DNA from: Haliotis rubra
Lineage: Eukaryota
Direction: 5' to 3'
Length of the DNA stretch: 64,000 bases
Assembly: GCF_003918875.1 (NCBI RefSeq)
Contig: NW_025767262.1
Location: 1-64,000, forward strand
In this document: in pieces, positions 4,130-57,413 of the stretch
Layout: each line of letters begins with the position of its first letter
Numbering within the stretch: the stretch's first letter is position 1
Notes under the pieces: model-generated
Seen by the model: the letters and a program-made list of their open reading frames with translations, nothing else
Told to the model about the DNA's origin: nothing
The model's database searches: none
Program-made: the position numbers and the translations under genes

Positions 4130-4227
4130 CGTGCAGAACGTGAGATGCGTGCGGTATAAAAGAGCGAAATGCAAACCACTGGGTACAAAGCAGCAACAAC
4201 CAAAAATGGCGTCGTTTTAGAACATAG

Positions 4228-4241
4228 GTCTCCATGGAGAT
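4228..4241 (-). promoter_or_regulatory. X-box (RFX-type) palindrome, copy A
   Basis: GTCTCCATGGAGAT; on the minus strand ATCTCC AT GGAGAC fits the relaxed consensus RTHNYY WT RRNRAC. Confidence 0.55.
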
Positions 4242-7360: not shown

Positions 7361-7465
7361 CGTGCAGAACTTGGGATACGTGCGGGATAAAGAGCAAAAT
7401 GTCAACACAGACGTGGAAACAAAGTGCAGCATCAACAACCAAAATGGCGTCGTTTGTGTGTGAAG

Positions 7466-7479
7466 GTCTCCATGGAGAT
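7466..7479 (-). promoter_or_regulatory. X-box (RFX-type) palindrome, copy B
   Basis: GTCTCCATGGAGAT about 106 nt upstream of the ATG, next to a CGCCATTTT (YY1-like) motif. Confidence 0.6.
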
Positions 7480-11111: not shown

Positions 11112-12863
11112 TTGTTACGTTTGTAAACAATACACTTCAAATCATAATGTTACAACCAGTACGTTTCCAAACATAATAATAAAGTCATCACTTTCATCGA
11201 CAACCAATAAACTAATATGTCAAACTGTTACTTGCTGTGCCAAACAATCCACAATTCTAGCCACCAAAACCGCTGTGTCATAAGCATTCAGAGTTAACCT
11301 TCTGCTGTGCCACTAATATCCATTCATGAAAATAATATGAACATCAAGCTTTTCTTCTCAAGAAGACGAAATTACCCTCAGGGGATACAGATTTGAAGTT
11401 GCCATCTAACATACTATCAACCTTGACTCTTCAAAGCAATTTCTTCTCTGGCTCTTTATGGTTCAATCTCCAGCGCAGTCTCTGCAAATGGTCCCCGCCC
11501 TGAGCCAAGCCACAACATCACGTACTTATTACAGATGGTCTGTTTACCGGGTATCGACTTACACAAGCACGAGTTCGCTGTCCTTCTTTTGCACCATGTC
11601 AACATGAGAAGTGCAGCCAAGTCGCCTAGAGACCAAACTTGAGAAGTCCTTGACCTTTGATCGTGCAGCGACAGTCGACTTGAAAAATTAGGTATCAACG
11701 GAAAAGGAATGATGTCTCGATGTCTCCATGGGACACGAGTGTATGTCGTCTTGTTCGTCTTAATCGGCTTGACTGAACATTGTATAAGAAAATGCAGAGG
11801 AATATACACGACCAAGCTGGAGGTTTTCATCGTCTCCTGCCACTCTTGACCTATCAAGGGCTTTTCTCTGAACACCGTTACCCTTTTGCCATCGGCTGCA
11901 AATTGTACTTGAAGAAGCGTCTGTTCCCCGGAGCCAAGGAACTGGTTGAGCATTTTCTGGATGGTCAATAACGCCAGCTTTCACATTACTGGTAGATTCC
12001 GTTACTCATATCTTTGTTTGAATGTATTTTGTTTTTGTTGGAAATAAATATAGTCTGTAGGATGAGACTAAATGATCAATGACATTGATGTTTAAAATGA
12101 TTTAATAGTTAGTGATTCGTCTGAGATATTATCTATCATCTAATAACTATTGGTGTCATTTGGCCCTCTTTTAATTTTATAAAACGAATGTAATGTTTTC
12201 AACATACCATTTCAAATACATCGTCTATAAAAAAAACGCTGGCGACGAAATAAGAAATCATTCAAAGTTAATATGAAAATAATAGTTCCGTCTTTTTCAA
12301 GAGTAAATTGATTGAAATGATGGTTCAAAATTAGGTATAATTAATAAAATGATCTCCATTATTGAAAAATAACAGAGCATTTAAACAAAAAGAATAACGT
12401 CACGAATGTGTTTTACTTGAATACTGCAAGTCATATGCAAGATTGTGCAACATTTCTTCAGATGGTTTGACGACTCTTTGTTTACCAAGACAGACACTCT
12501 ATTGTCCACCAGCTTCTTTCTAGCTTCGTGACAAGGACCAGGCTACCTATTCTCGAAACATTCGTAGCCCTACGAACTTCTTAAGCCCATTCTTAAAAGT
12601 GTGTATTTACAAAAGGAACAACATATTTCTGTCAATGGAATATGAGCTGTTAATTTCTTGGAAATTTGGTAGAGGTTCAGAAATGTTAGATTTGAATGTG
12701 TCTGAGTTGCATTTAACTTTCATAACACGCTACTAAAATCCATATTGTATTTTTAACTGTAAACAGTATCTGCCTCTAACTGGCTGTCGATATTTCGACA
12801 GTTTGGTGTGTTATTAAAACCAACAGGACACATTCAAACAACTTGAACCTATCCATGACCTAC

Positions 12864-13722
12864 AGGATCAGGGACTGGGGGTGTCTGTGCGGAGACGGGG
12901 GCCGGGTAGGTCCTAAACCTGTGGAGATCGTCCTGAGCTGGAATGGAACAAAAACGGAAATATATAAATGCACACATCAATCGACATGGTGACAGCTGTT
13001 AAGGTGGATCCTCATTTTTGACGACCTTATTCAATCAAATTATGCCAACCTTACTGGGTTCGGTGCCGTTGTCGAGGTAATGAGGTATTTTGACATGATA
13101 TTGGGGCAGAAAAGACACGAGTTCCTCGACACCAGAACGAATAAAAAGTGTCTGTAAACTCTGAAAACCCCAGTGAATACGTTATTTCATGATGGAGTTT
13201 CTATTCTCCAAAACAACTTTGGGTAAGCATTGGATAGATCCCATAGACATGGGAAAGGGAGACATGTAGTGTTATTCCCATTATTTATAAAAAAAAGATT
13301 ATTATTATGCTTTATCACTGGAATCTGAATTGAAGAATATGAATTAATAACATATATCAGATAGCTGTGAAATCAAAAAGGCATTTTACAAGCCTAAATA
13401 GAAAACAAAAAGAAGCGACATTATCCACACATTCAAATTCATGCACTTTCACTTCAAATGTGACAAATACATTGAGAAAATGATATAGTTCATGAAAATA
13501 GACGAGGAACCCGCATTGTGCATGGCTTGTCTCTTCCTGCGTCTGTCAGTCGTTTCCTTAGACATTTTATTGTCTTCAGGGCACGATTCAGCTTTGGGAT
13601 ACAATCCGTCAAAATTCATCAAAATGAAATCTACGAAATAAAAGGTAAAAAGCAAAAATAATTTAATTCAGATACCACAACTAGATACCTTGATGATAGA
13701 CCGAAGCAACAGAGGCATACAT
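12864..13722 (-). CDS. Orphan family copy B' (exons 1-2 only): 13722-13689, 12937-12864
   Basis: Splice sites are intact; encodes MYASVASVYHQAQDDLHRFRTYPAPVSAQTPPVPDP. It has no exon 3 of its own because the duplication starts inside intron 2. Confidence 0.6.
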
Positions 13723-13827
13723 CGTGCAGAACTTGGGATACGTGCGGGATAAAGAGCAAAATGTCAACACAGACGTGGAAACAAAGTGCAGCATCAACAA
13801 CCAAAATGGCGTCGTTTGTGTGTGAAG

Positions 13828-13841
13828 GTCTCCATGGAGAT
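13828..13841 (-). promoter_or_regulatory. X-box palindrome, copy B'
   Basis: GTCTCCATGGAGAT at the same spacing from the ATG as in B. Confidence 0.55.
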
Positions 13842-14879
13842 CCGTCTCAGCGACCGTCGCCTCTCGTCCCTTTCCGTAAACTGGGTAGCAGTTACCTGAA
13901 TGTTTACACTAGTCCGAGGACTCTGTTGTGCAACCGCAAGCGAGGGGCAAGGGTGCCACCTTAGTGTTAATATGTTTACGGTTACAAATGATGCATTCTG
14001 AAGCAGTAAACTGAAAAGAATTATATGGTTGGACGGTGGAAAGAGTATTTTCGTGCTGCCTGATTTCAACATGGCTATCGCAGCTACCTTAAGATACAAT
14101 CATCTTGTATAACTCACATAGAAATTCTGTGTATATCTGAAATAACAACAACCGTAGTATTACGCCCAACAAGGGGCAATTATCATGAAAATATACATAT
14201 TCCGTCGGGAAAGAGGGACAGTAAATCAGTATTAGATTCCTGGCCTACGTGTGATGGTGATAACACAAGGGGAGACCACTCCCATTGTATTGCTTTCTTA
14301 CATAAACTAGAATTGTTCCATTCATGTCACTCTAGTGGTTACTAAACAAAAACGTGCGCCCATTTCACACAGTATGCACTAAGTTGAAAAGCATGGAGCA
14401 AGTTGCTTAATTCCGTTAAAAAGGAATTTCAGACACCTCAACTCATTTTAGATCATGAGCAGTAACAATGTTAATTGTCTGACTTAAATATTACTGAGAC
14501 AATTCTCTTTGAGAGGAGGAACGAAGTCTGTTCCTATACTCCCAACTTCAACAACAAAGGAATTAAGCCCCTACTCCGCTAAGCTGACACACCTTGAAAG
14601 TGTAGCATAGTTGCATTCATGTCAGTCCAGTGGTCTCTAGACAAAACCCCGTGTCATTATTTCACACAGTTTGCGCGAAGTTGAAAAGGATGGAGCAAGT
14701 ACCATTACTCCATAAAATGACTTTCAGACCCCAATTGTCAAATACATTTAAGACTGAGCAGTAACATCAACAGAGTACAATTTTAATTATCTGACTTAAA
14801 TAGTTACTGGGAAAGTTGTTCTCATAGAGTTTCGTCCCTATACTTCCCGACCAACTTCTAAAATAGGATAATAACCAAA

Positions 14880-22131: not shown

Positions 22132-22329
22132 CTGGAGTAAAATATGAAAACACACACGCTTTCTTGGAAGAACAATGTTTACCATACACATCGAAAGTAT
22201 ATTATCATATGATTTTTAATCATGTATGAAACAATACGTATATTATAGCCAAAATAGTCCAAATGATTTGTCCGAAAGGTCCAAAAGCTATCAGTTCACA
22301 CAGCACTGGCACAACAAACACATCCAAGT

Positions 22330-23977
22330 CTATCTCTGTGTGAAGAAACTCTGGAACATGTGTTTCACACAGGACACAAGGACAGCCGAGCACGACTGGG
22401 GCTGCTTGGATTCTTCACCAAGATCGATCTCCACAACTTGAGGACGGGCTCTGGGGCAAGGACGGGAAGGAGGGCAGGGTGTCGGGCAGGGAGTAGAGGG
22501 GGTTGACGGTGATCGTGAAGACACCGGGGCGCTTATAGAGAGGAAACATAATTTCTAAATCACTGAAACCAGTATTGATGGACAGTTTAGTCAGACGGCT
22601 TGCATTAAGAGATCTGGGAAAGTGGACAATGTTTTTTGGAGTAGACAAACAATAAGTTTACAGAATAGATTACACAATACCATACATACATGTTACAATG
22701 CATACTTATGGATAATAACTTTAGGGTTCTGGTGTTAGGATAGCAAAAACGTGCTGGAACATTGTGAAGGTTAGTACAATAATCGAATATAGAATTGCTA
22801 TAGTGAGCACATTTCATGAAATGTGTGTGTTTCAATAAGGAATATGACATATTACTGTCAGTGGAATATAAACTGGTAATGTCTTGGAAAATTAGTATTG
22901 ATCGGGATTTGGAAATGTTAGATATGTATGTGGTCTGTTGAGTTATTGATAATATGATTTTAAACTTTGTGTCTTTTTTTTATCAAAACTCTATTCCATA
23001 ATCGTCTTAATAACATAATTCCATGAAACTGGTTGTCGATATTTGTTATATTGCTCTAGCTAATGGGACAAACTCGAACAACTTGAACCTGAAGATGACC
23101 TACAAGATCAGGGACTGGGAGAGTCTTTTGGGAGACGGGGGCCGGGTAGGTCCTAAACCTGTGGAGATCGTCCAGAGCTGGAATGGAATTAAAAAGAAAT
23201 ATATAAATATACACATGGATCAACATAGTAGCAGGTAAATGCTCAATGAACAGAGCAAATACAACAGACAAATTGACTATTAGCTATCGCCGCAAATGGA
23301 GACCTGAGTTTAAATGTAAGAATCATGAGGATTTTTGTTGTTCGTTAATGCTATTTGTTTTGAAGAGTCTAATCAATCATCCTAACTTCACAGGGTTAAG
23401 TGTCAGTGAATTTATTCAATGTGGTATTTTGATATATTGGGGCAGAAAAAAACCCCTTTTCCTCGCCTTGACACCAGAGTGAATAAGAAACTAAAAATAC
23501 TTCCAATGAATACTGTTGTACTTTCTTTTATAATGGACGCTCTATTCTCAAAACATCTTGTTACATTTCAGTTAATCTTGGATAGATCCCATAGACATGG
23601 GAAAGGGAGATATAGATCTGCATGAAGAAGTTACTTCACCGAGATCATCAAAAAATGCATTTTAGAAGCCTTTGCAAAATAGAAGCGACATACACACATT
23701 CACTTCACAGACAGACAAAAAGAAAATGATCTAGCACTTGAAAGTAGACGAGGAACCTACGAAGTACATGGGGTGTCTCTTACTGCGTCTGTCAGTCATT
23801 TCCTTAGACAGGGTTAGTGTTACCAAAGCTTCACCACACGATTCAACTTTGGGATACAATCCGTCAAAATTCATCAAAATGAAATCTACGAAATAAAAGG
23901 TAAAAAGCACTAACAATTTAACATAGACACCACTACTAGATACCTTGATGATAGGCCAAAGCAACAGAGGCATACAT
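22330..23977 (-). pseudogene. Orphan family copy C: exons 23977-23944, 23177-23104, 22531-22330 (exon 3 frameshifted as assembled)
   Basis: Exons 1-2 are intact (MYASVALAYHQALDDLHRFRTYPAPVSQKTLPVPDL). Exon 3 is 202 rather than 204 nt because of two 1-nt losses in G runs, so this may be an intact gene with sequencing errors. Confidence 0.7.
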
Positions 23978-24082
23978 CGTGCAGAACGTGAGATACGTGC
24001 GGGATAAAGAGCAAAATGTCAACACAGACGTGGAAACAAAGTGCAGAATCAACAACCAAAATGGCGTCGTTTTTGTGTTAAG

Positions 24083-24096
24083 GTCTCCATGGAGAT
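24083..24096 (-). promoter_or_regulatory. X-box palindrome, copy C
   Basis: GTCTCCATGGAGAT at the conserved spacing. Confidence 0.6.
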
Positions 24097-32407: not shown

Positions 32408-32605
32408 CTGGAGTAAAATATGAAAACACACACGCTTTCTTGAAAGAACAATGTTTACCATACACATCGAAAGTATATTATCATATGATTTTTAATCATG
32501 TATGAAACAATATGTATATTATAGCCAAAATAGTCCAAAATGTTTGTCCGAAAGGTCCAAAAGCTATCAGTTCACACAACACGGGCACATCAAACACATC
32601 CAAGT

Positions 32606-34344
32606 CTATCTCTGTGTGAAGAAACTCTGGAACATGTGTTTCACACAGGACACAAGGACAGCCGAGCACGACTGGGGCTGCTTGGATTCTTCACCAAGAT
32701 CGATCTCCACAACTTGAGGACGGGCTCTGGGGCAAGGACGGGGAAGGAGGGCAGGGTGTCGGGCAGGGAGTAGAGGGGTTGACGGTGATCGTGAAGACAC
32801 CGGGGCGCTTATAGAGAGGAAACATAATTTCTAAATCACTGAAACCAGTATTGATGGACAGTTTAGTCAGACGGCTTGCATTAAGAGATCTGGGAAAGTG
32901 GACAATGTTTTTTGGAGTAGACAAACAATAAGTTTACAGAATAGATTACACAATACCATACATACATGTTACAATGCATACTTATGGATAATAACTTTAG
33001 TGTTCTGGTGTTAGGATAGCAAAAACGTGCTGGAACATTGTGAAGGTTAGTACAATAATCGAATATAGAATTGCTATAGTGAGCACATTTCATGAAATGT
33101 GTGTGTTTCAATAAGGAATATGACATATTACTGTCAGTAGAATATGAACTGGTAATGTCTTGGAAAATTAGTATGGATCGGGATTTGGAAATGTTAGATA
33201 TTATAGATATGTATGTGGTCTGTTGAGTTACATTTATTATATGATTTTAAACTTTGTGTCTTTTTTTTATCAAAACTCTATTCCATAATCGTCTTAATAA
33301 CATAATTTCCATGAAACTGGTTGTCGATATTTGTTATATATGTTCTAGCTAATAGGACAAACTCGAACAACTTGAACCTAAAGATGACCTACAGGATCAG
33401 GGACTGGGAGAGTCTTTTTGGGAGACAGGGCCAGGTAGGTCCTAAACCTGTGGAGATCGTCCAGAGCTGGAATGGAATTAAAAAGAAATATATATATAAA
33501 TATACACATGGATCAACATAGTAGCAGGTAAATGCTCAATGAACAGAGCAAATACAACAGACAAATTGACTATTAGCTATTGCCGCAAATGGAGACCTGA
33601 GTTTAAATGTAAGAATCATGAGGATTCTTGTTGTTCGTTAATGCTATTTGTTTTGAAGAGTCTAATCAAATTATCCCAACGTCATAGGGTTAAGTGTCAG
33701 TGAATTTATTCAATGTGGTATTTTGATGTATTGGGGCAGAAAAAACCCTTTTCCTCCCCTTGACACCAGAGTGAATAAGAAAGTATAAAAAAATACTCCA
33801 ATGAATACTGTTGTACTTTCTTTTATAATGGACGCTCTATTCTCAAAACATCTTGTTACATGTCAGTTAATCTTGGGTAGATCCCATAGACATGGGAAAG
33901 GGAGACATAGATCTGCATGTAGTGTTATTTCCCATCATTCATCACAATTATCACTTACATGCTTTTTCACAGGATAGAACTAAAATTAATAACAGAAGTT
34001 ACTTCACCTAGATAATCAAAAATGCAGTTTAGAAGCCTTTTGCTAAAATAGAAGCGACATACACACATTCACTTCACAGACAAACACAAAGAAAATGATC
34101 TAGCACTTGAAAGGAGACGAGGAACCGACGAAGTACATGGGGTGTCTCTTACTGCGTCTGTCAGTCATTTCCTTAGACAGGGTTAGTGTTACCAAAGCTT
34201 CACCACACGATTCTACTTTGGGATAAAATCCGTCAAAATTCATCTACGAATTCTACGAAATAAAAGGTAAAAAGCACAAACAATTTAACACAGACACCAC
34301 TACTAGATACCTTGATGATAGGCCAAAGCAACTGAAGCATACAT
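32606..34344 (-). pseudogene. Orphan family copy D: exons 34344-34311, 33466-33393, 32807-32606 (exon 3 frameshifted as assembled)
   Basis: Exon 2 has compensating indels (YLALSPKKTLP). Exon 3 is 202 nt, with 1-nt losses in two G runs. Confidence 0.7.
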
Positions 34345-34449
34345 CGTGCAGAACGTGAGATACGTGCGGGATAAAGAGCAAAATGTCAACACAGACGTGG
34401 AAACAAAGTGCAGCATCAACAACCAAAATGGCGTCGTTTGTGTGTGAAG

Positions 34450-34463
34450 GTCTCCATGGAGAT
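34450..34463 (-). promoter_or_regulatory. X-box palindrome, copy D (second RFX-like site GTCGCTAGCAAC at 34555-34566)
   Basis: GTCTCCATGGAGAT at the conserved spacing. Confidence 0.6.
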
Positions 34464-37010: not shown

Positions 37011-37208
37011 CTGGAGTAAAATATGAAAACACACACGCTTTCTTGAAAGAACAATGTTTACCATACACATCGAAAGTATATTATCATATGATTTTTAATC
37101 ATGTATGAAACAATATGTATATTATAGCCAAATAAGTCCAAAATGTTTGTCCGAAAGGTCCAAAAGCTATCAGTTCACACAACACTGGCACAACAAACAC
37201 ATCCAAGT

Positions 37209-38946
37209 CTATCTCTGTGTGAAGAAACTCTGGAACATGTGTTTCACACAGGACACAAGGACAGCCGAGCACGACTGGGGCTGCTTGGATTCTTCACCAA
37301 GATCGATCTCCACAACTTGAGGACGGGCTCTGGGGGCAAGGACGGGGAAGGAGGGCAGGGTGTCGGGCAGGGAGTAGAGGGGGTTGACGGTGATCGTGAA
37401 GACACCGGGGCGCTTATAGAGAGGAAACATAATTTCTAAATCACTGAAACCAGTATTGATGGACAGTTTAGTCAGACGGCTTGCATTAAGAGAACTGGGA
37501 AAGTGGACAATGTTTTTGGAGTAGACAAACAATAAGTTTACAGAATAGATTACACAATACCATACATACATGTTACAATGCATACTTATGGATAATAACT
37601 TTAGTGTTCTGGTGTTAGGATAGCAAAAACGTGCTGGAACATTGTGAAGGTTAGTACAATAATCGAATATAGAATTGCTATAGTGAGCACATTTCATGAA
37701 ATGTGTGTGTTTCAATAAGGAATATGACATATTACTGTCAGTGGAATATGAACTGGTAATGTCTTGGAACATTAGTATGGATCGGGATTTGGAAATGTTA
37801 GATATTATAGATATGTATGTGGTCTGTTGAGTTACATTTATTATATGATTTTAAACTTTGTGTCTTTTTTTTATCAAAACTCTATTCCATAATCGTCTTA
37901 ATAACATAATTTCCATGAAACTGGTTGTCGATATTTGTTATATGTTCTAGCTAATAGGACAAACTCGAACAACTTGAACCTAAAGATGACCTACAGGATC
38001 AGGGACTGGGAGAGTCTTTTGGGAGACAGGGGCCGGGTAGGTCCTAAACCTGTGGATATCGTCCAGAGCTGGAATGGAATTAAAAAAGAGATATATAAAT
38101 ATACACATGGATCAACATAGTAGCAGGTAAATGCTCAATGAACAGAGCAAATACAACAGACAAATTGACTATTAGCTATTGCCGCAAATGGAGACCTGAG
38201 TTTAAATGTAAGAATCATGAGGATTCTTGTTGTTCGTTAATGCTATTTGTTTTGAAGAGTCTAATCAAATTATCCCAACGACATAGGGTTAAGTGTCAGT
38301 GAATTTATTCAATGTGGTATTTTTAAATATATGTGGGCAGAAAAAACTCCTTTTCCTCCCCTTGACACCAGAGTGAATAAGAAAGTATAAAAAAATACTC
38401 CAATGAATACTGTTGTACTTTCTTTTATAATGGACACTCTATCCTCAAAACATCTTGTTACATGTCAGTTAATCTTGGGTAGATCCCATAGACATGGGAA
38501 AGGGAGACATAGATCTGCATGTAGTGTTATTTCCCATCATTCATCACAATTATCACTTACATGCTTTTTCACAGGATAGAACTAAAATTAATAACAGAAG
38601 TTACTTCACCTAGATAATCAAAAATGCAGTTTAGAAGCCTTTTGCAAAAATAGAAGCGACATACACACATTCACTTCACAGACAAACACAAAGAAAATGA
38701 TCTAGTCCTTGAAAGTAGACGAGGAACCGACGAAGTACATGGAGTGTCTCTTACTGCGTCTGTCAGTCATTTCCTTAGACAGAGTTAGTGTTACCAAAGC
38801 TTCACCACACGATTCTACTTTGGGATACAATCCGCCAAAATTCATCTACGAATTCTACGAAATAAAAGGTAAAAAGCACAAACAATTTAACACAGACACC
38901 ACTACTAGATACCTTGATGATAGGCCAAAGCAACTGAAGCATACAT
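37209..38946 (-). CDS. Orphan small proline-rich protein, copy E (103 aa): exons 38946-38913, 38068-37995, 37412-37209
   Basis: 34+74+204 nt with canonical splice sites: MYASVALAYHQALDDIHRFRTYPAPVSQKTLPVPDPRPGVFTITVNPLYSLPDTLPSFPVLAPRARPQVVEIDLGEESKQPQSCSAVLVSCVKHMFQSFFTQR*. Confidence 0.88.
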
Positions 38947-39051
38947 CGTGCAGAACGTGAGATACGTGCGGGATAAAGAGCAAAATGTCAACACAGACGT
39001 GGAAACAAAGTGCAGAATCAACAACCAAAATGGCGTCGTTTGTGTGTGAAG

Positions 39052-39065
39052 GTCTCCATGGAGAT
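39052..39065 (-). promoter_or_regulatory. X-box palindrome, copy E
   Basis: GTCTCCATGGAGAT about 106 nt upstream of the ATG. Confidence 0.6.
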
Positions 39066-45077: not shown

Positions 45078-45620
45078 TATGAGAAGATCATGCATATATG
45101 AAGCATGTATGAAAATAATCACACTAATGACGCATCCTTCATTTCTGCTTAAGTCCGATTTAGTCCCTAAATATAGCACTCAGCTGTTAAACTCACACAG
45201 GCCAAACTCTCCGCCGTCTTCAACGCCCTTCGGGGGCAGGATCAAGCCACTTTGAGCTCTTTGATTCCGTTCTGGGATCACTTGAGCTCACCCACTCGGC
45301 AGCTATTAACAAGTCATATAGTTCACTCCGTCTGGTTACAGGGTCTTGTATCTCGCATTACGGCTATTATTGGCACCGTTGGTGCTCTGATGTGACAGTG
45401 AGTATTTTGGCGAAGGGATATAGAGAAAACCAGGCCCTAATGATGTAGCCTGTGCGCTGCTATATGTTTGTATGGGTTTTTTTGCTATGGACAGCTGCAG
45501 TAAGTCGTTTTGTGATATGATGCATTCTCCGGTTCCATTCTTCTGTTTGATTACGGATTGGTCAATAAATCGTCAAACATGTTTTGTTAAAAGGACCTGT
45601 TCCATAAGGAAAGATAATAA

Positions 45621-46046
45621 AGAAGTTTGTTCATCCCTATACTGTAATATAGAAGTTGTTCATCCCTATACTGTAATATAGTTGTTGTTCATCCCTATAC
45701 TGTAATATAGAAGTTGTTCATCCCTATACTGTAATATAGAAGTTGTTCATCCCTATACTGTAATATAGAAGTTGTTCATCCCTATACTGTAATATAGAAG
45801 TTGTTCATCCCTATACCGTAATATAGAAGTTGTTCATCCCTATACTGTAATATAGAAGTTGTTCATCCCTATACTGTAATATAGAAGTTGTTCATCCCTA
45901 TACTGTAATAAAGAAGTTGTTCATCCCTATACTGTAATATAGAAGTTGTTCATCCCTATACTGTAATATAGAAGTTGTTCATCCCTATACTGTAATATAG
46001 AAGTTGTTCATCCCTATACTGTAATAAAGAAGTGGTTCATCCCTAT
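45621..46046 (+). repeat. 29-bp minisatellite, about 15 copies
   Basis: Unit gttgttcatccctatactgtaatatagaa, nearly invariant, with no spacers. Confidence 0.95.
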
Positions 46047-47550
46047 ATCGTTATCCTTCCTTACTGCTCCAAGTTCTAAATGCCTCTCAAAGAAGTGCCA
46101 TGTGCCATGTTACTGGATGGTAAAGAAAAACACATATTCCACTATTCCGGCTGATAAGAACAATCGAATTGACATCAGATGTTTTGCTTCGAAACGATTT
46201 GTCTTGACCGGGAGAGGTATTAGCATGTGCATCCATAGCAGCGCCTTATGCATTCGCGAAAAAACCGTCTCTGGTTCTGGGTATTTTAAAGACCACGCAA
46301 AGCAATATAAGCTGTCCCCAGTTTATGTAATAATAGTTCCGCTGCAGTTGCTCATACATTCGTAAAAGACGCGCCTGTACACATAATAAAGATGACGCAA
46401 CGCAAAATACGACATCCCAAGTCTATGAGTGCCACAGTCTAAATTCTTTTTAACATCTACGTAGATGATGCTTACAACTTTCATGTTGTTCTGTTGTTCA
46501 ACGCTGCATGCGACAGCATCCCAGTCATATGACGACGCTCTGTAAATAATCGTGTCGCTACCACACAATCAAGTGATTGACATCATGAGCATCCATCTCT
46601 ACACTTGGATATGATGACGTGTCAACAACGCCAGCGACGGAGACCGCCAAGTTCCATTGTCGCCATTCGACAAGAATGTGTTCCTGAAGATCGATTCTGT
46701 TAAAATGAACGCCAAAAACAGAACAAACAACAACATAGGCAAGTAACAACTAACCAACAAGGAATATTAGATATGCCAACCAGAGTTATTCCCCTTCATG
46801 CACCAATACGTGCATGCCTAACGTTAAGTGATTTGACTGAGTGAATGTGTAAGAAGACCAGTGAGATTAAGATGACAACATATGTTTAGTAGTCACTGAA
46901 AGAAACAATTAATCCTATTGTAAAATAATTGCACTGGAAAACTCAGCTTTGATCAAATATTTGCTCACATTATCCCTTCAATTTTACGCATTGGGGACAT
47001 GTTCAGTAAACACTTGTTTTAGTTTAGTTTTAGTTTAAACATATTTTATGCACAATGTGAAAAGGATCGGGGATAAGTCCTTACAACTTATGAAACCCCT
47101 CTCCAAAGATATTTACAATAACTAATTACATCACAAACAATTATTAGAAACAGACACAGGAAGATGGACAGTTCAGGGGAAATGTTATAATACAGAAGGT
47201 GTATAGAAAGAATACTACTGGAATACTTCTTTTTTTAGTTATTGCTATGAAGTTTGGTAAAGGCCACATCACTTTCACGTGAACACTTAAGATACTGTCC
47301 TAAGAGATACGAAGGTGGTAAGGTATAGATCAGTGGTTAAAGCGTTCATTGAAAGGGGAAGTGTACATTTATTCCTATGTAACACAAAACGGAATTTTAG
47401 AATCAGTTAAAAACACGTACGTAAATTTATGATGGGATTTTTCAACAAAACTCATTACCCGTGAATATCCGGGCTAGAAGAAGCATTTCTACAAAATCAG
47501 CAAACTCGCTACCGTGTCATTGGATCGTCTCCGTCATTTGGTAGTCTCAT

Positions 47551-49920: not shown

Positions 49921-50084
49921 NNNNNNNNNNNNNNNNNNNNNNNNNNNNNNNNNNNNNNNNNNNNNNNNNNNNNNNNNNNNNNNNNNNNNNNNNNNNNNNN
50001 NNNNNNNNNNNNNNNNNNNNNNNNNNNNNNNNNNNNNNNNNNNNNNNNNNNNNNNNNNNNNNNNNNNNNNNNNNNNNNNNNNNN
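49921..50084. other. Assembly gap (164 N)
   Basis: Run of n. Confidence 1.
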
Positions 50085-55569: not shown

Positions 55570-55583
55570 GTCTCCATAACAAC
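55570..55583 (+). promoter_or_regulatory. X-box (RFX site), copy F
   Basis: GTCTCC AT AACAAC fits the strict consensus GTHNYY AT RRNAAC. It lies about 108 nt upstream of the ATG and is followed by the conserved cacaaacgacgccatcttg. Confidence 0.65.
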
Positions 55584-55690
55584 CGTTGTCTAACACAAAC
55601 GACGCCATCTTGTTGTTTATTGCTGACGCAAATCTCACGACTCTGCTGTCATTTCGCTCTGTGTTCCTCACATCTGGTGAATTGTGCATC

Positions 55691-57315
55691 ATGTATGCTA
55701 ATGCTGCCAGGGTTTACCACCAAGGTATATTTCTGTGTTCTTTATATCCTCCGTTTTCTTTGTTTATGCTTTGAATTCCAATGTTCTAGTCTAGCCTAGG
55801 GTCACAAAAGATAATAAGTGATTCCCTGAACTTGTCTTCTGTATAAACTGCAATGTTTGTTAATCAGTAGTGGTGGTCCGACTAATTGAAATAATCGAGG
55901 ATTGGTCGCAGTGACCAAACGACCACGCAATCGATCACATTTTCTCATAATCGAACACAAACGACTTTGGAACTAGATTCTACTGTGTTGACGATGGAAC
56001 ATATCTCAGAAGTTGTCAGGGCCTGAAAACGTGTTTTAATCTTTAGAAAACTCACTTCAATTACTGAAAAGTCGGACTGAATATTTCTTGAGGACTCTGG
56101 GAGGTTTGTGTTCATGATATGTTAGTCATCCCTTTTAATAGGCAAATTGCATCAGTTTACATTGGATGTGGAATTTGCGCAATTTCTAAATATAAAACAA
56201 AACACAACAGAAAATCTCGTGTTTTTTTCTGTATACTTATGTGCATTAACAACCTGAACACGAACATCTGCAACCCAATGACGCTAACCATTTTTTTCGG
56301 TGATTGCACGCTGGTAATGAACCAATGATTAATTGTGAGAGTTCAACCAATTCCAAACACTATTAATCAATTGAATCAGAATACCCCGTTCCTGTTGGAA
56401 ACCTCTCTTCTGTAATACATGTTAGCGTAGCTTTCAGCCATGAGAGCCATGCTAAGATACACAATTACATGTCAGAGAGGTACACAAAGTATGTGATTTA
56501 GACTACCGGTTGTCCGACTTTCATTTTTTGTAAAGTCTTGGTGCCTCATTCTGTGTGTGTAAGATGGGACTCAGCCAAAAACTACTAAAATCTGTACCTT
56601 CGTAAGAAAGTGTAATCCCAATAGCCCATTACATAGACAATCAGATGGTAATGGGTGCCTGTTTTTGATGTTGTCGCCCCTGACAATTTCAAAGGACTGG
56701 GTTTATGGTACCTGTGTATGTCTAGACTTGTCATGAATCTCTGTATTTCCAATATTCTTAATTGCTTATTTTCCTTCCGCAGGTCAAGTCAAGCTCCACA
56801 AGAAAGTATCTCCTGTGCAGATGGTCTCCCCTACCTCTGCTCCTGCCTCCACTCCTGCCTCCGCCCCTGCCTCCATCCCTACCTACACTCCTGTCCCTCA
56901 TCCAGTAGGTTGTATGTAGTGACTACTTGAAAACACCACAAGGCTCCCTACATCCATGAACACCTTGAATTGTAACTTATTATTGTTCAATTATATAATT
57001 CTTTCACTAAAAGATAATTGTCCTATGTAGTTTTGTAGTTTACATGGTACATTGAGTGCTTTTTCTGCCTCTATGGTCCTTTGTTTTATGACTTAAAGAC
57101 TGGTTTCTGTCTCCCCTCTTAAGTGCCCCAATACTGAGTGGATGGTCCACATCAACCCCCTGTCTGTCCTGCCCAACCCCCTGACCTCTGTCCCAACCCC
57201 TAAAAGCACTGCCTACATGGAGATTGTTCTTGTGGACGAAGATGCCTTGAAACAGCCACGATCATGTGTGCCATCCTTGTTTAGTTTTCTCAAGAGTATC
57301 TTCACTGTGTGTTAG
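55691..57315 (+). CDS. Orphan small proline-rich protein, diverged paralog F (115 aa): exons 55691-55724, 56783-56904, 57124-57315
   Basis: CAAG|gtat, ttccgcag|GT, CCA|gtaggt, ctcttaag|TGC give 34+122+192 nt: MYANAARVYHQGQVKLHKKVSPVQMVSPTSAPASTPASAPASIPTYTPVPHPCPNTEWMVHINPLSVLPNPLTSVPTPKSTAYMEIVLVDEDALKQPRSCVPSLFSFLKSIFTVC*. Intron phases match B and E. Confidence 0.85.
55868..56362. mobile_element. hAT-like MITE in intron 1 of gene F
   Basis: Ends TAGTGGTGG...CCAAACACTA, flanked by 8-bp ttaatcag/ttaatcaa (7/8 TSD match). Confidence 0.6.
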
Positions 57316-57372: not shown

Positions 57373-57413
57373 GGAACTTTCGGACAAACCTTTTGGATAT
57401 TCAATTTTGGACA
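57373..57413 (+). promoter_or_regulatory. Conserved 3'UTR element of the orphan family
   Basis: GGA[A/C]CTTTCGGACAAAC[C/A]TTTTGGA is shared with minus-strand copies at ~1344-1385, 22248-22284, 32524-32562 and 37127-37165. Confidence 0.55.

What the first reader, a model, noticed from the sequence alone, without database searches (positions are those of the whole stretch)
55570..55615. Positionally conserved RFX X-box upstream of every family member suggests a cilia/sperm programme
Seen: all six minus-strand copies carry ATCTCC-AT-GGAGAC (sense strand) and F carries GTCTCC-AT-AACAAC, about 100-110 nt upstream of the ATG. Each is followed by a conserved aaacgacgccatYtt (YY1-like) block. The sequence changed between E and F yet both versions fit the X-box consensus. 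Established: X-boxes bound by RFX factors (DAF-19, RFX2/3) mark promoters of ciliary and spermatid genes. Inference: the family is expressed in ciliated cells or testis, so these are candidate lineage-specific flagellar, ciliary or sperm proteins.
Basis: partly seen in the sequence, partly recalled or inferred. Interest (0 to 1): 0.8.

Follow-up and report, generated by a model that had tools for sequence, protein, structure and literature searches.

The report
Conserved X-box-like promoter module, abalone family
A 14-base palindrome and a nearby CGCCAT box sit in front of every gene of an abalone-only family of small proline-rich proteins and have been kept by selection. The palindrome is mostly a weak match to an RFX (cilia) site, and nothing yet shows cilia or sperm expression.

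Summary
The window is Haliotis rubra. ATCTCCATGGAGAC lies 112-119 nt before the ATG of six minus-strand genes, and GTCTCCATAACAAC lies 121 nt before the seventh. Each is followed by ACGACGCCAT(T/C)TTG.

The same two boxes precede at least 17 further family members in the genome, and homologues in H. asinina, H. cracherodii and H. rufescens. Between the two subfamilies the boxes are 76% and 93% identical. The flank (25%) and the spacer (34%, 10-24 nt long) are at random level. So this is a selected two-part DNA element.

The RFX reading is only partly supported. Scored against 29 validated nematode X-boxes, copy F is typical (18.6 bits). The common form (12.6 bits) falls just below the weakest validated site. 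Two H. asinina copies fall lower. By a fly-derived model all but F fail.

The second box fits YY1 (CGCCATNTT) well.

RefSeq long isoforms start at or before the palindrome, so in those genes it is transcribed rather than lying upstream of the start site.

No RNA evidence for tissue or start site could be obtained, so the cilia/sperm inference is untested.

Another scan note (s1-339977) reports X-box-like sites on another piece of this genome. I did not check it.

The parts
55570..55613 (+). Copy F module: X-box-like box GTCTCCATAACAAC (55570-55583), a 13-nt spacer, and the CGCCAT box AAACGACGCCATCTTG (55597-55612)
   Evidence: RFX PWM score 18.6 bits, equal to the median of validated C. elegans sites.
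39025..39065 (-). Copy E2 module: ATCTCCATGGAGAC (39065-39052 on the sense strand) and ACGACGCCATTTTGG (39039-39025)
   Evidence: PWM score 12.6 bits.
34423..34463 (-). Copy E module (same two boxes)
24056..24096 (-). Copy D module (same two boxes)
13801..13841 (-). Copy C module. Its promoter is identical to that of B, but the gene lacks exon 3.
7439..7479 (-). Copy B module (same two boxes)
4201..4241 (-). Copy A module: the same box, with CGCCAT box ACGACGCCATTTTTG (one extra T)
37209..38946 (-). Gene E2 (type I, 103 aa): exon 1 at 38946-38913, exon 2 at 38068-37995, exon 3 at 37412-37209 including the stop codon
   Evidence: I read the splice sites. The length and exon layout match the 103-aa RefSeq proteins of H. 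asinina and H. cracherodii.
55691..57315 (+). Gene F (type II, 115 aa): exon 1 at 55691-55724, exon 2 at 56783-56904, exon 3 at 57124-57315 including the stop codon
   Evidence: The translation is identical to XP_046543953.1 of Haliotis rubra.
38947..39039 (-). Leader of E2, from the CGCCAT box to the ATG. It is open in the main reading frame and encodes TTPFWLLILHFVSTSVL..., the same peptide that forms the N-terminal extension of long isoforms in other copies and species.

Best explanation
The box and the CGCCAT block form a two-part cis-regulatory module. Selection maintains it at the DNA level, at the 5' end of a Haliotis-restricted, tandemly amplified family of small (103-115 aa) proline-rich proteins.

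The upstream half is an X-box-type imperfect palindrome (RTYTCC-AT-RRNNAC). I take it, as the single most likely reading, to be a mostly low-affinity site for an RFX dimer. The downstream half (CGCCAT-N-TTG) is a YY1/Pho-type site close to the transcription start.

Shown: the existence, position and selective maintenance of both boxes, and the degree of match to validated X-boxes.

Inferred: which proteins bind them, where transcription starts, and any link to cilia or sperm.
For: Conservation islands. Between the two subfamilies, whose exon-3 proteins are only about 36-39% identical, the box is 76% and the CGCCAT box 93% identical. The 60 nt upstream are 25% identical and the spacer 34%. The spacer varies from 10 to 24 nt.

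Species range. The box is unchanged in H. cracherodii, H. rufescens and two H. asinina genes.

DNA-level constraint. The box is read in two different frames (DLHGD or ISMET). The CGCCAT box is also read in two frames (TTPFW in type I, NDAIL in type II). Coding constraint therefore cannot explain their conservation.

X-box likeness:
- The left halves ATCTCC-AT, GTCTCC-AT and ATTTCC-AT equal those of validated C. elegans X-boxes (che-11, tub-1, bbs-5, xbx-5, nph-4).
- The right halves AGCGAC and AACAAC, and the half GTCTCC, occur in validated fly sites.
- F scores 18.6 bits (validated median 18.4). The perfect palindrome in two array copies scores 15.7.
- At the type I score, the 64-kb window holds only one site outside the family.
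- Substitutions seen in the box cost on average 0.67 bit, against 3.4 bits for random ones (P = 0.035).
- The distance to the ATG (112-131 nt) lies within the range of validated nematode sites (60-285 nt).

YY1 likeness. The one variable base of CGCCAT[T/C/A]TT sits where I recall the YY1 consensus having its free base. The exact 16-mer occurs 17 times in the genome, 6 of them at loci without the family's exon 1, against 0 for the reversed control. YY1 motifs cluster just downstream of start sites in human promoters (PMC8384218).
Against: - The common type I box (12.6 bits) lies just below the weakest of 29 validated nematode sites (13.0). By a symmetric half-site model built from fly sites, every family box except F falls below all 26 validated sites.
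- Two intact H. asinina genes have GGACAC, and one H. cracherodii gene has a TT spacer. These lower the score to 8-13 bits.
- Position 4 is the least informative in RFX sites but is invariant here. Positions 1 and 12 are informative for RFX but vary here. The rank correlation is -0.31 and not significant.
- The canonical X-box 14-mer GTTGCCATGGCAAC is strongly over-represented in the genome: 133 sites against about 2.6 expected from base composition. The family palindrome outside the family lies largely in satellites and repeats.
- There is no binding, start-site or expression evidence of any kind.
Confidence: 0.4

Rival explanations
1. The palindrome is a real transcription-factor site, but for a factor other than RFX. 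It could be an unidentified dimeric factor that reads TCTCC-AT-GGAGA. It could also be a second, weaker CCAT-core site read by the same YY1/Pho-type factor as the CGCCAT box.
For: - The invariant core is TYTCCAT plus AC. It includes position 4, which RFX ignores. RFX-critical positions 1 and 12 drift.
- Most copies score below validated X-boxes.
- Both boxes share a CCAT core in the same orientation.
- From my own memory, not tested here: CTCCAT is the core of known YY1 sites such as the AAV P5 initiator.
Against: - No named factor could be matched with the tools at hand.
- The bases after CCAT (GG, AG, AA) do not fit the nTT of YY1 sites.
- The invariant AC six bases further on, and the exact 14-nt extent of the footprint, fit a two-half-site reader such as RFX better than a single CCAT site.
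Confidence: 0.3
2. The box acts mainly after transcription, in the 5' leader. Its CCATGG supplies an alternative start codon, which is an in-frame extension in some copies and a short upstream ORF in others. Its conservation would then reflect control of translation or a choice between isoforms.
For: - In all 11 genes of the C2070 array, the ATG inside the box is in frame with the main ORF. It adds 37 codons with a hydrophobic core, PFWLL(L/M)LHFVSTSVL.
- In H. cracherodii and H. rufescens an ATG 5 nt before the box is in frame, and 131-146-aa RefSeq models use it.
- The leader shows pN/pS of 0.51 in the main frame against 2.06 and 1.15 in the other two frames. Changes by codon position are 10, 11 and 20.
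Against: - Type II boxes have no ATG, and F has a stop codon inside the box, yet they keep TYTCCAT..AC.
- In the window's own type I copies the box ATG is out of frame and opens only a 13-codon ORF.
- The start codons of the long forms lie at three different places in different lineages, while the box itself stays fixed.
- The -3 base before the box ATG is T, a poor start context.
- The codon-position bias is not significant on its own (my chi-square on the counts, about 4.4 with 2 df).
Confidence: 0.15
3. The boxes have no function. They are shared only through descent and gene conversion among recent duplicates.
For: The six window copies are 75-98% identical across the whole promoter. Conservation among them alone therefore says little.
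Against: - The boxes persist between subfamilies whose flanks are at random identity (25%).
- They persist across four species.
- They persist across spacers of different length and sequence.
- Substitutions inside the box are filtered.
Confidence: 0.07

Closest known systems
Validated DAF-19/RFX X-boxes of C. elegans ciliary genes: che-11 ATCTCCATGGCAAC, bbs-5 GTCTCCATGGCAAC, tub-1 ATCTCCATGACAAC, xbx-5 GTCTCCATGACAAC, che-2 GTTGTCATGGTGAC (PMC3245922, Table 1)
   Same: A 14-nt site with two 6-nt halves and an AT spacer. The left half, RTCTCC-AT, is identical. The distance to the ATG is about 60-285 nt there and 112-131 nt here. A right half ending in GAC occurs once, in che-2.
   Different: Almost every validated site has a strong right half ending in AAC. 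The common abalone form pairs two weak halves (ATCTCC and GTCTCC). It scores 12.6 bits, against 13.0-23.0 for the validated sites.
Drosophila dRFX target X-boxes: CG14870 GTCTCC-CG-GGCAAC, CG4525 GTTGCC-A-AGCGAC, CG13809 GTTGCC-AC-AACAAC (PMC2375033, Table 2)
   Same: Each half-site used by the abalone family (GTCTCC, AGCGAC, AACAAC) occurs in a fly site that is conserved and lies before an RFX-dependent gene.
   Different: In flies each weak half is paired with a canonical GTTGCC or GGCAAC half. The abalone boxes never have one. The only fly consensus that the family fits is RYYNYY-N1-3-RRNRAC, which the authors found not to be predictive.
MDBP/RFX1 methylation-dependent sites, where 5-methyl-C stands in for T (reviewed in PMC3185043)
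   Same: The reverse complement of the type II right half AGCGAC is GTCGCT. With its CpG methylated it would mimic the canonical half GTTGCT. F's AACAAC carries the C-to-T change at that CpG, read on the opposite strand.
   Different: This is purely an inference from sequence. The methylation state of these promoters in abalone is unknown.
[quoted passage not shown] 2007, as cited in PMC8384218)
   Same: A GCCAT core followed by nTT, with a fixed orientation relative to the gene, in promoters without an evident conserved TATA box.
   Different: The start site is not mapped here, so the position relative to +1 is unknown. The abalone box has a longer invariant 5' part (ACRACGCCAT).

Membership tests
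RFX X-box | Imperfect inverted repeat of two 6-nt half-sites separated by 1-3 nt | tested here: met
   RTYTCC-AT-RRNNAC in all copies. Two array copies are the perfect palindrome GTCTCCATGGAGAC.
RFX X-box | Fit to a restrictive consensus: RTNRCC-N1-3-RGYAAC or GYTRYY-N1-3-RRHRAC (PMC2375033), or GTHNYY-AT-RRNAAC (the nematode form, which I recalled from memory and checked against the 29 sites of PMC3245922) | tested here: not met
   No family box fits the two fly consensus forms. Only F fits the nematode form. All others fit only RYYNYY-N1-3-RRNRAC, and the two H. asinina GGACAC boxes fail even that.
RFX X-box | PWM score within the range of experimentally validated sites | tested here: inconclusive
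   Nematode PWM: F 18.6, palindrome 15.7, type II 10.2-14.6, type I 12.6, GGACAC forms 10.0-13.1. Validated sites score 13.0-23.0 by leave-one-out. Fly half-site model: only F is within range.
RFX X-box | Lies within a few hundred nt upstream of the ATG, or near the start site | tested here: met
   112-131 nt before the main ATG. Validated nematode sites lie 60-285 nt before the ATG. The position relative to the start site is unknown.
RFX X-box | Conserved in orthologous promoters while the flanks diverge | tested here: met
   Four Haliotis species and two subfamilies.
RFX X-box | Bound by an RFX protein, with RFX-dependent expression in ciliated or spermatogenic cells | not testable with these tools
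   No usable RNA run was found. The runs guessed to be RNA looked mainly like unspliced or genomic DNA of relatives. No paper mentions these genes.
YY1/Pho binding site | CGCCAT core followed by nTT, with the n free (consensus recalled from memory) | tested here: met
   ACRACGCCAT[T/C/A]TTG in all 19 distinct promoters. In the CGCCATNTT core only the n varies.
YY1/Pho binding site | Used at unrelated promoters of the same genome | tested here: inconclusive
   The exact 16-mer occurs 17 times against 0 for the reversed control, 6 of them at loci that lack the family's exon 1. I did not establish what those 6 loci are.

The most novel reading that the evidence does not exclude
The palindrome is a dual-use element: a transcription-factor site that also carries an alternative start codon (CCATGG). 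Depending on where transcription starts relative to it, and on a 1-nt difference in the spacer, a gene would make one of two products. One is the short 103-aa protein. The other is a form extended by 37-46 codons with a signal-peptide-like hydrophobic core. The family would then switch between an intracellular and a secreted or membrane-anchored product through one 14-nt element.
Probability: 0.15. Interest if true: 0.55.

Novelty: new member of a known kind. Interest (0 to 1): 0.3.

Why it matters
If RFX does read this box, a genus-specific, rapidly evolving and tandemly amplified gene family (about two dozen exon-3 matches in H. rubra) has been wired into the ciliary or spermiogenic programme. 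That would be a clean case of new genes joining an ancient regulon through weak sites. It would also give candidate abalone sperm or cilia proteins in a genus famous for fast-evolving reproductive proteins.

If RFX does not read it, the case is a caution. A match to the loose X-box consensus, repeated across recent duplicates, looks more convincing than it is.

Either way, the module is a well-delimited pair of footprints that is ready for EMSA and reporter tests.

Tried and rejected
- **RNA evidence.** Two searches of public runs, with exon 3 of E2 and of an array copy, found no holder recorded as RNA. I laid four runs guessed to be RNA, from two related species, on the gene. Most contigs carried diverged introns, so they are genomic or unspliced. 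They gave no start site, and run and sample names are coded so no tissue could be read.
- **RNA hairpin.** The palindrome could fold as a 5-bp stem around CAUG. Type II, F and the GGACAC variants break the pairs without compensating changes, so I rejected this.
- **General use of the palindrome in the genome.** The counts are inflated by satellites and dispersed repeats. The eight non-family contexts I read have no CGCCAT box and do not look like promoters.
- **X-boxes of true ciliary genes in this genome.** I did not try another route to them.
- **Protein identity.** There are no Pfam hits and no convincing atlas neighbour. A profile search of 1.84 billion representatives found only Haliotis proteins, plus one weak hit to a repetitive fish protein that I take as spurious.
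- **Literature.** No paper mentions these LOC ids or mollusc X-boxes.

Full report
**What is in the window.** The window is from Haliotis rubra. The 115-aa protein I derived for copy F is identical to XP_046543953.1 of that species. The genome has 1.378 Gb in 2855 contigs.

The window holds a tandem array of a small three-exon gene. There are six copies on the minus strand, which I call A, B, C, D, E and E2, and one diverged copy, F, on the plus strand.
- My gene model for E2 has exons at 38946-38913, 38068-37995 and 37412-37209. It gives a 103-aa proline-rich protein. RefSeq proteins of exactly 103 aa with the same layout exist in H. asinina and H. cracherodii, and one of 104 aa in H. rufescens.
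- Copy C lacks exon 3.
- Copies D and E carry 1-nt deletions in runs of C in exon 3. These are either pseudogenes or homopolymer assembly errors.

The protein has no Pfam domain. A profile search of 1.84 billion representative proteins found only Haliotis relatives and one weak hit that I take as spurious. The family is therefore genus-restricted as far as these data go.

**The observation.** ATCTCCATGGAGAC occurs six times on the minus strand, and GTCTCCATAACAAC once at 55570. Each is followed by ACGACGCCAT[T/C]TT. The box starts 119 nt before the ATG in five copies, 112 nt in A and 121 nt in F.

Because the six copies are recent duplicates, they count as roughly one observation. I therefore looked for more distant relatives.
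- The genome has about two dozen exon-3 matches to the family. They include an 11-gene array on contig C2070, two genes on C2069 and one on C2850. Further F-like genes are on C2070, C2067 and C872.
- All of these carry both boxes.
- Type I genes have [A/G]TCTCCATGGAGAC. Two array copies are the perfect palindrome.
- F-like (type II) genes have ATCTCCATAGCGAC, ATTTCCATAGCGAC or CTCTCCATAGCGAC.
- Across species, H. cracherodii, H. rufescens and two H. asinina genes keep ATCTCCATGGAGAC. Two H. asinina genes have [A/G]TCTCCATGGACAC, and one H. cracherodii gene has ATCTCCTTGGAGAC.

**Is it under selection?** I aligned 19 distinct promoters. Mean identities per block are in the table.

| Block | Type I vs type II | Within type I |
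|---|---|---|
| 60 columns upstream of the box | 0.25 | 0.63 |
| Box (14 nt) | 0.76 | 0.96 |
| Spacer | 0.34 | 0.35 |
| CGCCAT box (16 nt) | 0.93 | 0.90 |
| Leader, CGCCAT box to ATG | 0.52 | 0.84 |

The spacer ranges from 10 to 24 nt. So there are two islands of conservation, with edges that coincide with the 14-nt box and the CGCCAT block.

The box is translated in two different frames in different genes (DLHGD or ISMET). The CGCCAT box is also read in two frames (TTPFW in type I, NDAIL in type II). The constraint is therefore on the DNA or RNA, not on a peptide.

An RNA hairpin does not explain it either. The variants break the potential stem without compensating changes.

**Is it an RFX X-box?** I built a weight matrix from the 29 validated 14-nt C. 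elegans X-boxes in Table 1 of PMC3245922. I also built symmetric half-site models from those sites and from 26 proximal X-boxes of dRFX-dependent fly genes in Table 2 of PMC2375033.

In favour:
- The family's left halves (ATCTCC, GTCTCC, ATTTCC, each followed by AT) are letter-for-letter those of che-11, tub-1, bbs-5, xbx-5 and nph-4.
- AGCGAC, AACAAC and GTCTCC each occur in validated fly sites.
- F scores 18.6 bits against a validated median of 18.4. That score is expected once per about 700 kb of background.
- At the type I score, the window holds only one site outside the family.
- The six single substitutions seen in the box lose 0.67 bit on average, against 3.4 bits for random ones (P = 0.035). 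The multi-step changes from type I to type II and from type II to F raise the score.

Against:
- The common type I box scores 12.6 bits. That is just under the weakest validated site (13.0), and is expected once per about 35 kb of background.
- Type II boxes score 10.2-14.6 bits, and the GGACAC and TT-spacer variants 8.1-13.1.
- In the fly half-site model, everything except F is below all validated sites.
- Validated sites pair a weak half with a strong one. The family pairs two weak halves.
- Position 4, which carries almost no information in RFX sites, is invariant here. Positions 1 and 12, which are informative, vary.
- The only published consensus that the common box fits is RYYNYY-N1-3-RRNRAC. 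Its authors found it equally often before control genes, and called its presence not predictive of RFX-dependent expression.
- The canonical 14-mer GTTGCCATGGCAAC is strongly over-represented in this genome: 133 dispersed sites against about 2.6 expected from base composition, and 0 for the reversed control. The family's palindrome outside the family lies largely in satellites and repeats.

One side point concerns the type II right half, AGCGAC. Its reverse complement is GTCGCT, which would mimic canonical GTTGCT if its CpG were methylated. This is the known behaviour of MDBP/RFX1. It remains only an idea here.

**The second box.** Its core is CGCCAT[T/C/A]TT. The one variable base lies where I recall the YY1 consensus CGCCATNTT having its free position (from memory).
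- The exact 16-mer occurs 17 times in the genome against 0 for the reversed control. Six of these lie at loci without the family's exon 1.
- YY1 motifs are concentrated just downstream of start sites in human promoters (PMC8384218).
- This is the better of the two factor assignments, but it is still untested.

**Where does transcription start?** I could not obtain RNA evidence. No public run recorded as RNA holds the gene. The four guessed-RNA runs of related species that I laid on it gave mainly contigs with diverged introns, meaning genomic or unspliced material.

Annotation gives an indirect hint. RefSeq models of 146 aa in H. cracherodii, and isoforms of 131-132 aa in H. rufescens, begin at an ATG 5 nt upstream of the box. 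They read through the box and the leader in frame. To my knowledge of the NCBI pipeline, multiple isoforms require transcript support. That would place at least some start sites upstream of the box.

**An unexpected feature.** In most type I genes the leader between the CGCCAT box and the annotated ATG is open in the main frame. It encodes a conserved hydrophobic stretch, TTPFWLL(L/M/I)LHFVSTSVL.
- In all 11 genes of the C2070 array, the ATG inside the palindrome (CCATGG) is in frame and adds 37 codons.
- In the window's own copies a 1-nt difference in the spacer puts that ATG out of frame, where it opens a 13-codon upstream ORF.
- The leader shows pN/pS of 0.51 in the main frame, against 2.06 and 1.15 in the other frames. 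Changes by codon position are 10, 11 and 20. This is suggestive but not significant alone.
- The box may therefore also matter for translation or isoform choice. That cannot be the whole story, because type II boxes lack the ATG.

**Verdict.** The module is real and selected.

| Reading | Confidence |
|---|---|
| RFX dimer site (best single guess) | about 0.4 |
| Another factor, possibly a second CCAT-type site | about 0.3 |
| Role in the 5' leader or at translation | about 0.15 |
| No function | under 0.1 |

The step from X-box to a cilia or sperm programme has no support yet. It needs start-site mapping, tissue RNA-seq and binding assays.

The N run at 49921-50084 was left untouched.

Noticed in passing
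G000 contig C2070, about 616.9-699.4 kb (loci L045-L055); compare window 38947-39065: In all 11 genes of this array the ATG inside the palindrome is in frame with the main ORF. It adds a 37-codon N-terminal extension with a hydrophobic, signal-peptide-like core. In the window's own copies the same ATG is out of frame and opens a 13-codon upstream ORF.
   Followed up: partly
window 22270-22650 (copy D), 32550-32930 (copy E), 12595-13941 (copy C): D and E have 1-nt deletions in C-runs of exon 3 that shift the frame. These are either pseudogenes or homopolymer assembly errors. C has a promoter identical to that of B but no exon 3.
   Followed up: partly
whole genome G000: RTCTCCATGGCAAC is the exact che-11/bbs-5 type of X-box. 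It occurs 624 times against about 13 expected, and about 92% of the listed hits are the A form, dispersed over many contigs. It is probably carried by a dispersed repeat.
   Followed up: no
G000 C258:327.9-333.5 kb, C26:36.8-37.3 kb, C1:5.702 Mb (loci L062, L067): The 12-mer TCTCCATGGAGA is part of several tandem satellites, with units of about 44-90, 130 and 181 nt. These inflate its genome count.
   Followed up: partly
window 57373-57413 and 37126-37165: A 3' UTR element (GGAMCTTTCGGAC..TTTTGGA) is shared by F and the type I copies although their coding sequences are highly diverged. An earlier scan note flags the same element.
   Followed up: partly
window 55691-57315 (copy F): RefSeq names this 115-aa protein 'WW domain-containing adapter protein with coiled-coil-like'. 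It has no Pfam WW or other domain. The name probably comes from low-complexity Pro/Ser/Thr similarity.
   Followed up: partly
window 37995-38068 (exon 2 of E2), run X3 record 11: One contig of a related species matches exon 2 exactly from boundary to boundary. It then continues upstream into 30 unrelated letters that do not end in an acceptor AG. This could be splicing to a different first exon in that species.
   Followed up: no
window 45540-46148: A tandem repeat of a 29-nt unit, about 20 copies.
   Followed up: no
G000 C2850:342.8-344.7 kb (loci L002, L044): The promoter stretch and the exon-3 protein are identical to those of window copy B. This may be a haplotig or a very recent duplication.
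   Followed up: no
exon 3 of type I genes across species: Between species, exon 3 shows pN/pS of about 1.0 at 11.7% divergence. Within H. rubra, the exon-3 proteins of B and E2 are identical while the adjacent intron is about 70% identical. This suggests fast protein evolution between species with conservation, or gene conversion, within a species.
   Followed up: partly
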